Shown piece by piece: positions 43,629 through 48,051 of a DNA stretch of 64,000 bases. Under the pieces are notes generated by a model. It had not been told where the DNA came from, made no database searches, and worked only from the letters and a program-made list of their open reading frames with translations. A program made the position numbers and the translations under genes. Source of the stretch: Oikopleura dioica (taxonomy: Eukaryota > Animalia > Chordata); assembly GCA_907165135.1 (NCBI GenBank), contig OU015568.1, forward strand, positions 6,076,001-6,140,000, read 5' to 3'. Numbering within the stretch: the stretch's first letter is position 1; each line of letters begins with the position of its first letter.

Positions 43629-43795
43629 ATCTCATTTTCTAGTCTTATTTTCTGCCAAACGGATAACACGAATCATTCTTCATTACTTTTAATCCTTGTT
43701 GATTTTGATTTATGATTCGGTTTTATTAACATTTCTTTTTGGAGGAAGAGTTGAATGTACATATCAATCAGAGGTAGCAACTATATGAACTATTT

Positions 43796-46700
43796 TTACA
43801 TATCGATTCGTGCAGGGACGTTTTCAGGCAGGAGATATTCATATGGAACTCTCCACGATTTGTTTCTAAAATGCAATCAGCAAAACGGGATGATCCAGGA
43901 ACAAACCGTTCGTTAATCTTTTTTCCAATATCCTTGACGTCCTGGGTAAATTCTTCAAGTATCTTTATAGCGCTTTCCTCTGTGAATAGCTTCATGGGAA
44001 ACTCGCCCAGAAAGACCTGAAGTTAATATGTCAAAAATTTATTTGACTCGAGGGCGCGTACCTCGTCGGCTGGTGGGGTTGACAATGTGTGCGAGACGGC
44101 CATTTGCGCGCACATCAGGTCTTGATCTGGCAGCGTGTTCATTATGTCTTCCATTGTCACCTTTTTCGGGGCTCAAAATGAGCTCCTCCCTCGGCATAAA
44201 GTTAACTATTTCAAGCCCCTTTCCTTATCTTTGTCAACTGGAGCTGGCTGTCTGAGAAGAACTGGATGCGCGGGTGGATTTCCATAGATGTCGAACATGG
44301 GATTTCCTTCTGCGGCGTGTTGAACACTCGACATAAAGATGATTCCAGTGAGAAGATGAATTAGCTCGTCCTGAAATGAGTGGAAAGTGCGTCTTTTCAT
44401 CGCGATCTCTTACCTTTGTGCTGAGCTCGTTTGGTAGCTTGTCGTCATCAGCGTACGCGAATCCAAATTTCTAAAAAACAATCATTTAACTTTCCAATTA
44501 GCGATTAGTGATTGTGGCTGGCGGCAGATGTTGGAAGTGCCTAATGGCGACCATCTATCTTCACTAACCTTTGACTCCTTCATGAAGTCTTGTAATTCGC
44601 TGTCTTGGACAACATCACCGTCGCTCTTGTAATACAGCTCGATGATTCGACGCGTGTACTTTTGATCGCCGACCAGTAGAGCAGCGAGTCGTCTCGGTAG
44701 CCGTACTCTTTTATCTATTGACTCGTATTTTACCCATATAAGCATGTCCAATTTACCTTTGAATCAAGAACTCCCGCTTCGCGAGACATTTGGGCACGTC
44801 AAAGTCCTCAATCGACCACTTTTTGAAGCCTCTTTTGAGAAGTTCAAGATGTCCCCGCCGCCTTGGATACATAAATAAACTGGCATTTCAATCAATCTGT
44901 AATTACCAGTGGACATGACACGGTCAATGGTACCTCCGGGACTGATCATGACTCCCCTAGCATATGAATCGACAGCAATGATATGCTAGACATTGGCTTA
45001 TTATTAAAAGAAGAAGAGCGTCCGTATTGACTCAATACAGATGCTCGAGAAGAGCGACTCCCGGAAGTAACTGAGCGTACCTGCAGATGAGTGAACATGA
45101 AGCGGAAAAGAGGATGATTTCGCGAAACACGGCGGCGGAGTGCGATTGCAAACGGCTCCGTCACCATGTGCGTGAACAACAAATGCTCATTCAGTTGCTG
45201 GATCTGAAATAAAATGATTTTGTTTGAAAGTTTCTTTTACAGATTCATCAACTGACTGAACATACAGAGAATGAGCGGTGCCACGAGTGGATAAGTACAT
45301 CAATCAAGAATTAAATCAAGACGAAAGTCCGCTTGCATATTAATCAGATACCTAGAGATGTGGTTTTGCCAGTGTTTGCCCCTGGGACGCCTTCCCCCAT
45401 TTCCCGGCCGATGGTGTTCAGCGCGAGGTGGAAGGGTGTATGAGTGGCCAGCAACTTTCTGAGGGGGTGCACGATGCTCAAATTGCGGATCATGGCAACC
45501 ACAAAGGGCTCGGGCGCCAAGTGACACCGGAGCAAATGTTCAGTCACTTGTTGAATCTGACTCGGCCTGAATTAGGCAAGCCCGCAAATTGGAATTTCTT
45601 ACCTGTCCGTTGGCGCTGTTGAAAAACATCTTCGCCAGCAACCACGCGTTTGGTGGATCTTTTGGGGTGAACACGGGATTGTTTTCTTCCTTATTCGAGA
45701 ATAATTGAATCGCCAGTGGCTCGAGGAAGCCTTCATTGTTACAGTAAAGGACGAGCAGGGGCGCGCAAGTGTAGTTTTTCGTCTAATGAGAATCAATTTC
45801 AATTAGAGTCTGGCGGAAGTCACATAATTTACCTTGAGTATTGGGTGATCGCCGCACGGGATTCCTTCCAGATAGTTCGATAATAGCTGGATAATAATAA
45901 AAACACGGTGATGAGTTTGTCAGATGACCTTTCTTTCAGAAGATCACTGAACCTCAAACTTTCAGTTTAAATTTGAATATAAATAAGTTAAAAACTATTC
46001 CTTCAAGAATCGAGTTGTCTACCATGAAGATGCGGCCATCGAGTAAAGCGTTCTGATAAGTGACTCCACTTGGGAGGCATTTTTCCAAATCAGCTGTTGT
46101 GATGGAGTAGTACTTTGGAAGGCTCTTGAAAACCCTCTGCACCCCGGTTGGTCTGAATATTCGATTCAAAGGACAAGTGGGGAATCATTTCTCTTACCTG
46201 CATCCATTGATTTGTTGTCGGGCGAATTCGAGGTCGGATCTATAAAAATTAACTATTTTGATAAAGATGGATAGTAATGGGTACCGCCAGTTATGCCAGC
46301 AGTCGTGATTGATTTCCCGATTTTTCATCGTTGGAATAAGCAAGAGTTTGTGCACATCTTCCAGCGAGTCGAAATTTCTAAAGATTCCCACGAAGCGATT
46401 GAGGAGCAGATTTTTGAGACCAGTCGCGCGACAGTTGTGGAACTCGGCATCGCGTTCGGCCGACCATTGCGAGTTTCTTGGAAGATCTCTGTGCTGCTCT
46501 GCTTGGAGATGCCCATTCAGGCCGTATGTGAGGTCTTCTTTCTCTGGCTCCGCTCGCCAGCGATAGGTCGTTCGCTGTTTTCGGAGATATTCTTCTCGGA
46601 ACTTTCGTTTGACTTCAAGACTATCGTCTTGTGGGAGATATGCGGTACCCTCGGCGGTCGTCGCTCCGTCTGTTACCCATTCGTAGAAGGGGAAGAAATA

Positions 46701-47158
46701 TTCTTTCGACTTTTCGGGGTTTACTGAGTTCGCGATCAAGGAAAAAATAGGAGAATTTGAAAACCCGTCCTTCATAATAACTTTGACATACTCCACATAC
46801 CAATCAGGAGAGAGCCCCTTGTCCTTTATCACTAAAAAAGATGCTAGAAGAAGAAAAAAAGCAGGTTCTTACGAAGTTTGCAGAGAAGAGGCGTTCCAAT
46901 ATTCTTCATTTTGATGATGAACTTGTCTGAATTTCCTCTCTCAAAGTCATCGCGAAAAAAGTTATCAATTTTTGTCGGTTTCGTAGAACTGTCCTCGCCG
47001 ATCAGTTGAATCTTCACGTCTGCATCTGTGCCCGCTGCTTTCGTGTTTCCAGTTTTGACGACGACTTTGTAGGTGATCTCTTCGGCGAAGGGGTCTCCGA
47101 AGTCGATCGACTTGGTCTTGCTGTTGATGCAGTAGGCTAGTCTCTTCATCAGTGCCAT
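43796..47158 (-). CDS. Lipoxygenase (PLAT + LOX domain) with alternative active-site exons
   Basis: PLAT YKVVVKTG..AGTDADV..DFERG; WLLAKMFF; HLLxxH (two versions); YRDD; QHAA; C-terminus PYEYLLPENVPARIDM*. Confidence 0.92.
44907..45203 (-). CDS. Lipoxygenase alternative module B (exons 45081-45203 and 44907-44985; 202 nt, phase 0 to 1)
   Basis: CAG|IQQLNEHLLFTHMVTEPF..HPLFRFMFTHLQ|GT..AG|HIIAVDSYARGVMISPGGTIDRVMST-G|GT. Confidence 0.85.
45352..45556 (-). CDS. Lipoxygenase alternative module A (one exon, 205 nt, phase 0 to 1)
   Basis: CAG|IQQVTEHLLRCHLAPEPF..HPLRKLLATH..LNTIGREM..TTSL-G|GT. Confidence 0.85.
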
Positions 47159-48051
47159 GTACTGGCTCGCTTCTTCCGTTCTCTTCTGCGCGGTTCGCTC
47201 CTCGGGGAATCGCCAGCCACAAAATTATCAATTGTCGCGGAACAGCGCCGCCGCTGCCAGCTCAGAATCGTCGACGACGCTCTCCTTCCCGTTTTGGATT
47301 CAGTTCAACTCCCATTTAATTCATTTATCAAAATTAGAATTAAATTGAGCCCCTCTTTCAAAGCAGTGTATACTTTGCCCTGCTGATAGATCAAATAATG
47401 ATTAAATACTGAATCGACCTTTTCTTTGGCCCAGTTTGATTCAAAAACGAGCCTTTTTCTTGACTCTTGATTTGCATGATAATTTCTAAATGATCATTAT
47501 CGCCAATTCAGCTGCTGAAGTTCAGCTGAACTCTGTCCAAGACTCAAGACAGCTTAGTCTTTACTTTCCGATGAAGAGATGAAATCCCGAGTGTCATAAT
47601 CGGATGACAGGGAATAGGAAAAAGTGCTCATCCGCGATTCCATTCCTTTCAAATTAGCCTCGCCTAGAAATTTCTGATGATGCAAAAAGAGCTAATGTTA
47701 TGTCTACTGCTGGGAAATAAATACAGTATAGTTCGGGACGGTCAAATTTGTAACTGACAGAATGCGCAATTATCAGAATACAATTTTGAGGCAGACGATC
47801 TTTTGAATATTTCATGATTTCAGGTTCATTGTCTGAATCTTCTCGCAACTACGATTTTCCCAACATAAACAATACTTGGTTCTCATATTGGCCTACGTAC
47901 TATCCAAATAATGAACCCAAAATAGCAGCAAGCGCCGCGTGGGTTAGTAAATCCTTGTACCGCTTGTTTTGTATTCTACCGGAGGGTGAGTTGCCAGGAC
48001 AAAAGTAGTAAAAGCACGGTCGAGAAGAAATCCATGTTGAATTTTTAGTTT

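What the first reader, a model, noticed from the sequence alone, without database searches (positions are those of the whole stretch)
44907..45556. Lipoxygenase with two mutually exclusive active-site modules: Gly versus Ala at the R/S stereo-determinant
Seen: after WLLAKMFFNSANGQ there are two paralogous versions of the iron-binding helix, A (205 nt, one exon) and B (123+79 nt). Both run phase 0 to phase 1, so including both would frameshift. Counting from the first His of HLLxxH, position 44 is Gly in A (LNTIGR) and Ala in B (VDSYAR), aligning without gaps to Ala410 of human ALOX5 (INTKAR). Established: this Coffa-Brash residue is Gly in most R-LOXs and Ala in most S-LOXs. Inference: one gene may switch product position or chirality by splicing.
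Basis: partly seen in the sequence, partly recalled or inferred. Interest (0 to 1): 0.88.

Follow-up and report, generated by a model that had tools for sequence, protein, structure and literature searches.

The report
Lipoxygenase with two swappable active-site exons
A planktonic tunicate's lipoxygenase gene has two alternative versions of the exon block that builds its iron-binding catalytic core, and no transcript was seen with both. One version has the glycine typical of R-type enzymes and the other the alanine typical of S-type enzymes; selection has kept both in at least five lineages, and a conserved RNA hairpin switch probably makes the choice.

Summary
A minus-strand lipoxygenase gene (47158-43796) has two homologous modules after exon 5: A (45556-45352) and B (45203-45081 plus 44985-44907). 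Both run from phase 0 to phase 1. A has Gly and B has Ala at the Coffa-Brash position.

Apparent frameshifts after the modules are homopolymer errors in the assembly. With read-supported fixes, the isoforms are complete at 706 and 705 aa.

RNA shows exon5->B1->B2->exon7 in two RNA-seq runs and two environmental transcript contigs. One metatranscriptome contig shows A->exon7 with B skipped. No transcript with both modules was seen. The exon5->A joint was not observed.

Both modules occur in five lineages found in marine metagenomes. They form separate A and B clades, Gly and Ala never vary, and dN/dS is about 0.02-0.03.

New here: the A-B intron holds one conserved island. It is antisense to the acceptor and first ~21 nt of both A and B. 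Duplex energies lie far beyond shuffles, and two base pairs show compensatory changes. This looks like a docking/selector toggle.

The R/S product switch is untested. The swap replaces the whole arched helix, not one residue.

I found no paper describing this. The scan holds about 32 other mutually-exclusive-exon notes on this genome, none on this gene.

The parts
43796..47158 (-). Whole lipoxygenase gene: N-terminal PLAT domain plus LOX catalytic domain, about 17 exons. Isoform A is 706 aa and isoform B is 705 aa after read-supported homopolymer fixes.
   Evidence: Gene model. Pfam PLAT and Lipoxygenase matches. The 3' half is confirmed by the spliced contig L008 and by X10 joints. It is the only LOX copy in the window.
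45603..45782 (-). Constitutive exon 5 (..PLAIQL..WLLAKMFFNSANGQ). It ends in phase 0 and its donor serves both modules.
   Evidence: loose ends reading AKMFFNSANG next to B1; L008 has E5 contiguous with B1.
45352..45556 (-). Module A (205 nt, 68 aa plus 1 nt). It carries HLLRCH, the two His iron ligands, ALNTIGR with Gly at codon 45409-45407, and a Gly/Pro-rich tail.
   Evidence: X10 contig 4 joins 45352 directly to 44861, reading SLGGGGH in frame. Orthologues were found. dN/dS is 0.013/0.72.
45536..45559 (-). Selector A: the acceptor CAG plus the first 21 nt of module A, complementary to the docking element (22/24).
   Evidence: I2; stem present in MFE and centroid; -32.0 kcal/mol, 0/300 shuffles; strongest of 256 exon-start x intron pairs in the gene.
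45204..45351 (-). Intron between module A and B1 (148 nt).
   Evidence: Across the six loci it does not align apart from one island.
45232..45263 (-). Docking element: an intronic antisense copy of the module's 5' end (ATGTTCAGTCAGTTGATGAATCTG plus 8 nt), 29-60 nt upstream of the B1 acceptor.
   Evidence: (the only invariant block, ATGTTC..T....T).
45183..45214 (-). Selector B: the polypyrimidine tract, acceptor and first 21 nt of B1. It forms a local hairpin with the docking element (17-nt loop).
   Evidence: I1; -24.7, 2/300; hairpin is MFE and centroid, z -2.4; 109/126 cells paired across the 6 loci.
45081..45203 (-). Module B, first exon (123 nt): IQQLNEHLLFTH..FTHLQ, with both His ligands.
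   Evidence: E5->B1 joints appear in X20, X21 and X10 and in L008.
44907..44985 (-). Module B, second exon (79 nt): HIIAVDSYARGVMISPGGTIDRVMST(G). Ala is codon 44961-44959.
   Evidence: B1->B2 and B2->exon7 joints have 6-22 reads per run. The orthologous single-exon B aligns without gaps to 8R-LOX.
44757..44861 (-). Constitutive exon 7 (GGGHLELLKRGF..RGVLDSK). It accepts from A or from B2. The window lacks one base in each of two homopolymer runs here.
   Evidence: table 4 (X1 insertions behind 44852 and 44772).

Best explanation
This is one lipoxygenase gene of an Oikopleura-type appendicularian. An old tandem duplication gave it two versions of the exon block that encodes the helix with the two His iron ligands and the following arched helix over the substrate channel. 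The two versions are spliced in a mutually exclusive way.

Shown:
- Each mRNA seen carries A or B, never both.
- Any other combination breaks the frame.
- Both versions are old and under strong purifying selection.
- A always has Gly and B always has Ala at the Coffa-Brash position.

Inferred, with good support: the choice is steered by competing RNA structures. One conserved element in the A-B intron is antisense to the 3' splice site and first ~21 nt of both modules.
- If it pairs with A, the A acceptor is hidden and module A is looped out, so exon 5 joins B.
- If A has already been used, or the element instead closes the local hairpin over the B acceptor, B is hidden and A joins exon 7.

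Inferred, with weak support: the two enzymes differ in the oxygenation product (chirality, position, or more), because the swap changes the Coffa residue, the Sloane-type positions and the whole arch.
For: Splicing: E5->B1, B1->B2 and B2->E7 joints have 3-22 reads in X20 and X21. X10 contig 5 reads E5-B1-B2. X10 contig 4 joins A's donor 45352 directly to 44861 in frame, skipping 494 nt. One X21 read ends exactly at A's donor boundary, as computed from the depth bins. No A->B1 joint was seen. L008 is a spliced B-isoform transcript.

Frame lock.

Intact gene: the X1 DNA contig repairs the frame.

Conservation: A plus B are present in W, L009, L006/L001, L002-5 and L007. Further A-type exon ORFs all carry ALNTIGR. 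The A clade has support 99/97 and the B clade 100/99, each holding all five lineages. dN/dS between W and L009 is 0.013/0.72 for A and 0.007/0.22 for B.

RNA element:
- Inverted repeats in the window.
- Duplex energies of -19 to -34 kcal/mol against shuffle means of -9 to -16, with 0-7 of 300 shuffles as low, in all six loci and for both A and B.
- It is the only conserved island in the intron.
- The local hairpin with B's start is both MFE and centroid in all six loci, z -2.0 to -4.3.
- 109/126 paired cells against 35-50 when shifted, with two compensatory pairs tracking synonymous exon changes.
- The element fits A-specific and B-specific bases in each lineage.
- The A stem is the strongest of 256 within-gene pairs.

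The pattern fits the duplication model of Ivanov and Pervouchine (PMC6071210).
Against: - The A isoform rests on one 156-nt metatranscriptome contig at depth 3.2 and one read. The E5->A joint was not seen.
- X20 and X21 come from a population only 88-95% identical. Module A differs by about 13% between W and L009, so the near-absence of A cover there may be a mapping artefact. The A:B ratio is unknown.
- The compensatory changes come from essentially one lineage split (L006/L001 versus the rest).
- A and B starts are homologous and coding-constrained, so dual complementarity is partly automatic.
- The fold of the whole 441-nt region is not better than shuffles (z -1.2).
- The B duplex in the window alone is only 2.5 SD from the within-gene mean.
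- The direction of the effect (pairing hides the exon) is inferred.
- There are no enzymology data. The Ala/Gly rule has exceptions.
- Module A lacks the invariant arched-helix Leu.
- Both isoforms have Gly where the Asn/His/Ser iron ligand sits.
Confidence: 0.8

Rival explanations
1. Mutual exclusivity comes only from the reading frame (mis-spliced forms removed by nonsense-mediated decay) and ordinary splice-site competition. On this view the antisense element is a leftover of an inverted partial duplication with no role in exon choice.
For: Every wrong combination gives an early stop. A and B starts are homologous, so one antisense copy matches both by descent. The whole-region fold is not significant.
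Against: The element is the only invariant island in an intron that otherwise cannot be aligned between lineages with saturated synonymous divergence. It keeps its place 57-123 nt before B. It follows synonymous exon changes with compensatory changes. Duplex and hairpin energies beat shuffles in all six loci.
Confidence: 0.22
2. Module A is a little-used relic or a decoy whose inclusion has no enzymatic purpose, so the gene in practice makes only the B enzyme.
For: B dominates every RNA data set with reads and L008. B is more conserved than A, about 85-93% against about 70% between lineages. A lacks the invariant Leu of the arched helix.
Against: A has dN/dS of about 0.02, with 24 synonymous against 2 non-synonymous changes. 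It has an intact frame and splice sites in five lineages, and invariant His ligands, Gly and tail motif. A spliced in-frame A->E7 contig exists at a depth similar to the B contig in X10. Low A cover in X20 and X21 may be a threshold artefact.
Confidence: 0.07
3. The isoforms do differ in function, but not as an R/S pair. Isoform A may use another substrate or carry out another reaction (for example hydroperoxide transformation), or it may act as a regulator, because its arch is rebuilt.
For: A's segment after the Coffa site is Gly/Pro-rich, one residue longer, and has Gly at the position of the invariant Leu. It aligns to solved LOX structures only up to the Coffa site (query residues 2-52/53 of 68), whereas B aligns over its full length. 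The tail motif is strongly conserved. The Ala/Gly rule fails in some LOXs.
Against: Gly is invariant in A and Ala in B over all lineages, as expected if that position matters. A's best structural match is an R-lipoxygenase with Gly, 11R-LOX.
Confidence: 0.4

Closest known systems
Competing-RNA-structure control of mutually exclusive exons (Dscam exon 6, 14-3-3zeta, human ATE1 exons 7a/7b; duplication model of Ivanov and Pervouchine 2018, PMC6071210)
   Same: One docking sequence is complementary to two selector sequences that arose by tandem exon duplication, and only one pairing can form at a time. In ATE1 the shared partner is an intronic element (R3), for which two others compete (abstract of PMC7797038).
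   Different: Here the selectors are the 3' splice sites plus the first ~21 coding nucleotides of the alternative exons themselves. Pairing should therefore hide an exon rather than expose it, and synonymous codon positions co-vary with the intron. The organism is a chordate with ~45-nt introns. No experiment has been done.
Chicken beta-tropomyosin exons 6A/6B (from my own knowledge, not checked here)
   Same: A two-exon mutually exclusive pair in which a secondary structure that sequesters one exon and its flanks represses it.
   Different: That structure hides one exon in a tissue-specific way. Here one element can hide either exon.
Mutually exclusive exon pairs that retune an enzyme (PKM exons 9/10, from my own knowledge; ATE1 7a/7b)
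   Same: Homologous exons of nearly equal length swap a functional segment of one enzyme.
   Different: Here the swapped block holds two metal ligands and the main stereo- and regio-determinants of the catalytic site. No such case turned up for any lipoxygenase.
Coffa-Brash Ala/Gly stereo-determinant of lipoxygenases (coral 8R-LOX, 11R-LOX, human 5-LOX)
   Same: Module A carries Gly and is most like 11R-LOX. Module B carries Ala at the aligned position. Most R-LOXs have Gly and most S-LOXs have Ala (PMC6612559).
   Different: In known cases the residue distinguishes separate genes or engineered mutants, not splice forms of one gene. Exceptions to the rule exist, and these modules differ at many more positions.

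Membership tests
Lipoxygenase (PLAT + PF00305) | N-terminal PLAT domain and LOX catalytic domain | tested here: met
   PF01477 E 1e-10 and PF00305 E 2e-36. The C-terminal half matches 8R-LOX at 1.7e-52.
Lipoxygenase (PLAT + PF00305) | Two His iron ligands in HxxxxH and a third His in the QHAA motif | tested here: met
   HLLRCH in A and HLLFTH in B. QHAA aligns to 8R-LOX QHAA.
Lipoxygenase (PLAT + PF00305) | Asn/His/Ser axial ligand four residues after the third His | tested here: not met
   HAAEGN aligns without gaps to HAAVNF, so Gly sits at that position with Asn one residue later. This is conserved in L006, L007 and L009. The ligand is described in PMC7436259.
Lipoxygenase (PLAT + PF00305) | C-terminal carboxylate ligand (usually Ile) | tested here: inconclusive
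   The protein ends ..PARIDM, and this ending is conserved. The ligand is the main-chain carboxylate, so Met may serve.
Mutually exclusive homologous exons | Adjacent homologous exons with the same phases, whose joint inclusion or joint skipping breaks the frame | tested here: met
Mutually exclusive homologous exons | Transcripts with each alternative alone and none with both | tested here: met
   B alone is seen in many reads and two contigs. A alone is seen in one contig plus one read, and the E5->A joint was not seen. No A->B1 joint was seen. Depth is modest.
Mutually exclusive homologous exons | Both alternatives conserved under purifying selection | tested here: met
Docking/selector competing RNA structures | One sequence complementary to a site at each alternative exon, using the same nucleotides | tested here: met
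Docking/selector competing RNA structures | Conservation and covariation of the pairings | tested here: met
   Island of conservation. 87% of cells paired against 28-40% when shifted, with 2 compensatory pairs. Few independent events.
Docking/selector competing RNA structures | Disrupting or restoring the pairing changes exon choice | not testable with these tools
   Needs a minigene, morpholino or structure-probing experiment.
R- versus S-lipoxygenase by the Ala/Gly rule | Gly or Ala at the aligned Coffa position | tested here: met
R- versus S-lipoxygenase by the Ala/Gly rule | Product chirality measured | not testable with these tools
   Needs recombinant enzymes and chiral LC-MS.

The most novel reading that the evidence does not exclude
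A chordate gene uses a conserved RNA toggle to build either an R-type (Gly) or an S-type (Ala) lipoxygenase active site. The toggle is an intronic antisense copy of the exon start that can mask either of two acceptors. One locus would then make oxylipins of opposite chirality or position on demand. This would be the first natural case of lipoxygenase stereocontrol by splicing. It would also be a docking/selector system whose selectors are coding sequence.
Probability: 0.3. Interest if true: 0.88.

Novelty: new variant of a known kind. Interest (0 to 1): 0.77.

Why it matters
Lipoxygenase position and chirality decide which lipid mediators an animal makes. So far these properties have been attributed to separate genes or to engineered point mutants. 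Here nature keeps two full versions of the catalytic helix pair in one gene, differing at the classic Gly/Ala determinant and across the whole arched helix. That is a ready-made pair of chimeras for testing what really sets stereo- and regio-control.

The conserved antisense element makes this compact two-exon system a tractable model for RNA-structure-guided exon choice in a chordate. The pairing constrains synonymous codon positions, so the mechanism can be tested directly with compensatory mutations.

Tried and rejected
- Pseudogene reading. With canonical sites the raw window gives stops after the modules. I rejected this because the Illumina DNA contig X1, the X10 contigs and the RNA reads carry the missing homopolymer bases, and the repaired isoforms are complete.
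- A second alternative pair at the duplicated LEGI motif (candidate exon 45886-45833). I rejected this because the spliced contig L008 reads ..SILEG|(I/V)PCG.HPILK|T.NYTCAP. This implies a GA..AG intron at 46000-45865 whose ends share GAAGGAAT.
- Exon 8 starting at 44707. I replaced this with 44714.
- B2 alone against solved structures found nothing. I used single-exon orthologues of B instead.
- A word-indexed protein search with A found only two genomic exon ORFs and no spliced A fragments.
- The 'two stretches' in P0068 and P0044 are not duplications.
- The fold of the whole 441-nt region is not better than shuffles. Only the specific stems are.
- I computed the pair counts in a script rather than with the count of structure pairs, to avoid typing a long structure string.
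- Literature searches for a lipoxygenase with mutually exclusive exons, for Oikopleura mutually exclusive exons and for Oikopleura lipoxygenase found nothing relevant.
Full report
**What is there**

The region lies in a minus-strand gene that runs from the ATG at 47158 to the stop at 43796. It encodes an N-terminal PLAT domain and a lipoxygenase catalytic domain. The upstream exon ends at 45603 in phase 0 with ..WLLAKMFFNSANGQ. Two homologous coding modules follow it:
- Module A is 45556-45352, 205 nt in one exon.
- Module B is 45203-45081 (123 nt) plus 44985-44907 (79 nt).

All these exons have canonical AG/GT sites, and both modules run from phase 0 to phase 1. They match the same segment of the Pfam lipoxygenase profile, positions 345-396/410. 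In the ungapped first 52 positions they are 21/52 identical. Each carries the HxxxxH pair of iron-ligand histidines.

Module A has Gly (codon 45409-45407, TIGR) and module B has Ala (codon 44961-44959, SYAR), 43 residues after the first His. HMMER aligns A's ALNTIGRE without gaps to 11R-LOX AINTLGRN and to 5-LOX AINTKARE. A single-exon orthologue of B (AVDSYARG) aligns over its full length, without gaps, to coral 8R-LOX AIDTIGRK.

**A correction: the gene is not broken**

With canonical splice sites the raw window gives stop codons straight after either module. Laying an Illumina-derived DNA contig of the same organism (X1) on the gene gave 0 substitutions and 8 gaps. All gaps are extra bases in homopolymer runs, including behind 44852, 44772 and 44659 (table 4). 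An X10 RNA contig also carries the base inserted behind 44659. The apparent frameshifts are therefore assembly errors.

With those bases restored, and with three splice sites corrected from RNA evidence, both isoforms are complete at 706 aa (A) and 705 aa (B). The three corrections are:
- Exon 8 starts at 44714.
- An in-frame GA..AG intron lies at 46769-46710.
- A GA..AG intron lies at 46000-45865.

Including both modules gives a stop six codons into B1. Skipping both, or joining A to B2, also gives early stops.

**Are both modules used, one at a time?**

Two bulk RNA-seq runs of the same species label (X20, X21) gave reads 88-95% identical to the window, so they come from another population. 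In each run they show:
- exon5->B1: joint reads, plus loose ends that read AKMFFNSANG next to B1;
- B1->B2;
- B2->exon7, reading TGGGGH in frame.

Each joint has 3 to 22 reads per run.

A marine metatranscriptome (X10, contigs 95-99% identical) holds one contig reading exon5-B1-B2. It holds another that joins A's last base 45352 directly to exon 7 at 44861. That contig reads SLGGGGH in frame and skips the 494 nt that contain B1 and B2. The depth bins of X21 also imply a single read that covers 45352-45538 and stops exactly at A's donor boundary (table 2).

A JGI contig (L008) is a spliced B-isoform transcript from a close lineage. It confirms the whole 3' gene model.

No A->B1 joint was seen, and the exon5->A joint was not covered.

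One caveat matters. Module A differs by about 13% in nucleotides between the window and the close lineage L009, whereas B differs by about 5%. Reads from X20 and X21 on A may therefore have failed my 88% threshold, and the A:B ratio is unknown.

**Conservation**

A search of 1.84 billion representative proteins with module A returned about ten short exon ORFs from marine metagenomes. They are 69-81% identical to A and all carry ALNTIGR. I fetched their contigs and scanned metagenome contigs with module B. This gave genomic loci from four further lineages:
- L009 and L010;
- L006, L001 and L011;
- L002 to L005;
- L007.

All of them carry exon 5, then A, then B, then exon 7, in that order. Gly in A and Ala in B never vary.

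Intron positions inside the modules do differ. A is split in L002 and L007. B is unsplit there, and it is split at another place in L006. The modules have therefore been kept while the gene structure around them changed.

In a tree of the module region, the A copies form one clade (support 99/97) and the B copies another (100/99). Each clade holds all five lineages, so the duplication is older than their split. Its relation to other lipoxygenases is unresolved.

Between the window and L009, A has 24 synonymous and 2 non-synonymous differences (dS 0.72, dN 0.013). B has 9 and 1 (dS 0.22, dN 0.007). Both modules are therefore translated and constrained.

**A conserved RNA element that can pair with either module**

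The A-B intron of the window holds a 24-32 nt element (45263-45232). It is the reverse complement of two sites:
- the acceptor plus first 21 nt of A (45559-45536; 22/24 match, 272 nt away);
- the acceptor plus first 21 nt of B1 (45214-45183; 25/32 match, with a 17-nt loop).

The long-range stem with A appears in both the MFE and the centroid fold of the 441-nt region, although that region as a whole folds no better than shuffles (z -1.2).

The same arrangement is present in all six loci. An ATGTTC-containing element sits 57-123 nt before B's acceptor. Its best duplexes with the A start and the B start are -19 to -34 kcal/mol, against shuffle means of -9 to -16, and 0-7 of 300 shuffles do as well.

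In an alignment of the introns this element is the only invariant block apart from the splice sites.

Folded locally, the hairpin between the element and B's start is both the MFE and the centroid structure in all six loci, with z from -2.0 to -4.3. The hairpin encloses B's branch region, polypyrimidine tract and acceptor.

Over 22 proposed pairs, 109 of 126 cells are paired, against 35-50 when the partner is shifted by 1-3 columns. Two pairs change on both sides: A-U to G-C at the Asn codon third position, and G-C to A-U at the Leu codon first position. The intron is thus following synonymous changes in the exon.

In each lineage the element is a hybrid that fits some A-specific and some B-specific bases. 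It uses U opposite the A/G third position of the Glu codon, so it can pair with either version.

Within the gene, the A-start pairing is the strongest of 256 exon-start by intron combinations, and the B-start pairing ranks third.

**How it most likely works**

Shown: the exon choice is exclusive in the transcripts seen, and wrong combinations are out of frame.

Inferred: the element acts as a single docking site for two selectors that are the exon starts themselves.
- Pairing with A hides A's 3' splice site and loops A out, so exon 5 meets B.
- If A was spliced first, or the local hairpin forms, B's acceptor is hidden and A's donor goes on to exon 7.

The two pairings use the same nucleotides, so only one can exist at a time.

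This is the pattern predicted when a stem-loop arm is duplicated together with an exon (Ivanov and Pervouchine 2018, PMC6071210). It resembles the ATE1 and Dscam-type systems. The differences are that the selectors here are coding sequence plus the acceptor, and that pairing should repress the exon rather than expose it. The direction of the effect and its size are untested.

**What the two enzymes might do**

The module spans both His ligands, the Coffa-Brash position, and the arched helix with the positions equivalent to the Sloane determinants.

Most S-lipoxygenases have Ala and most R-lipoxygenases have Gly at the Coffa position, and Ala-to-Gly exchanges raise the share of R products. However, zebrafish LOX1 and a Myxococcus enzyme do not follow the rule (PMC6612559).

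Module B is a canonical-length arch, with Met at the place of the invariant Leu that positions the substrate. That Leu is L546 in soybean LOX-1, and mutating it to Ala costs about 100-fold in activity (PMC7436259). Module A has Gly at that place. Its tail is one residue longer and Gly/Pro-rich, and the tail is itself strongly conserved. It aligns to solved lipoxygenases only as far as the Coffa site.

I therefore consider a difference in product profile likely. A clean R/S switch is only one of several possibilities.

Both isoforms also share two family-wide oddities:
- Gly sits where the Asn/His/Ser iron ligand normally sits (QHAAEGN).
- The C-terminal residue is Met.

**Comparison with what is known, and novelty**

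Mutually exclusive exon pairs that retune an enzyme, and RNA-structure control of such pairs, are both known kinds. Full-text searches found no description of a lipoxygenase with mutually exclusive exons, of mutually exclusive splicing in Oikopleura, or of an Oikopleura lipoxygenase.

Earlier notes of this scan name the genome as Oikopleura dioica. They list about 32 other 'mutually exclusive' findings on other genes, and a docking/selector array 10 kb away in this same window. None of them concerns this gene. I did not test those notes. They made me look for RNA pairing here, and they suggest this genome uses the device often.

I rate the finding a new variant of a known kind. It is a real, conserved and expressed exon swap at the catalytic heart of a lipoxygenase, with a testable RNA toggle. 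Its biochemical consequence is still open.

Read laying was given 3,551 letters.

Noticed in passing
window 43700-47250: The window assembly lacks single bases in homopolymer runs compared with an Illumina-based contig of the same organism: 8 gaps and 0 substitutions in 3.5 kb, behind 43735, 43792, 44472, 44659, 44772 and 44852. Apparent frameshifts elsewhere in this assembly may be the same artefact.
   Followed up: yes
window 46710-46769 (-): An in-frame 60-nt GA..AG intron lies inside what looks like one long ORF in the linker after the PLAT domain. It is spliced out in an X10 metatranscriptome contig.
   Followed up: partly
window 45865-46000 (-): A GA..AG intron whose two ends share the 8-nt repeat GAAGGAAT, so the exon end LEGI appears twice in the DNA. 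The joint is inferred from spliced contig L008 of a close lineage. A similar repeat (CATCC.ATT.G.AAG) flanks the intron that splits module A in L007 at about 2585-2675. This hints at intron gain by local duplication.
   Followed up: partly
window 44161-44223 (-): A third non-canonical GA..AG intron in the same gene. Its removal is seen in an X10 contig.
   Followed up: partly
window 44224-44370 and 43796-43865 (-); L006, L007, L009: All lineages have QHA(A/S)(E/D)GN, with Gly at the position of the Asn/His/Ser iron ligand. All whose C-terminus is covered (L006, L008, L009) end in ..RIDM instead of the usual C-terminal Ile. This is an atypical metal site shared by both isoforms.
   Followed up: partly
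L002, L006, L007 compared with window modules: Intron positions inside the modules differ between lineages. A is split in L002 and L007. B is unsplit there and is split after HPLY in L006, but after THLQ in the window and L009. This shows fast intron turnover around conserved coding sequence.
   Followed up: partly
window 45081-45203 and 44907-44985, compared with L009: Synonymous divergence in module B (dS 0.22) is a third of that in module A (dS 0.72) between the same two lineages. This may reflect extra RNA-level constraint on B.
   Followed up: no
protein P0004 (891 aa): A plant-type lipoxygenase model that contains two tandem copies of the same iron-helix segment (HQLANHWLRTH.. and HQLVSHWLRTH..). 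It may be an unrecognised tandem exon duplication or a mis-modelled alternative pair in another lipoxygenase.
   Followed up: no
window 44891-44902 (-): The intron after B2 contains TTACAGATTGAT, which is 92% complementary to the 3' part of the docking element (I5). It could be a third pairing partner or chance.
   Followed up: no
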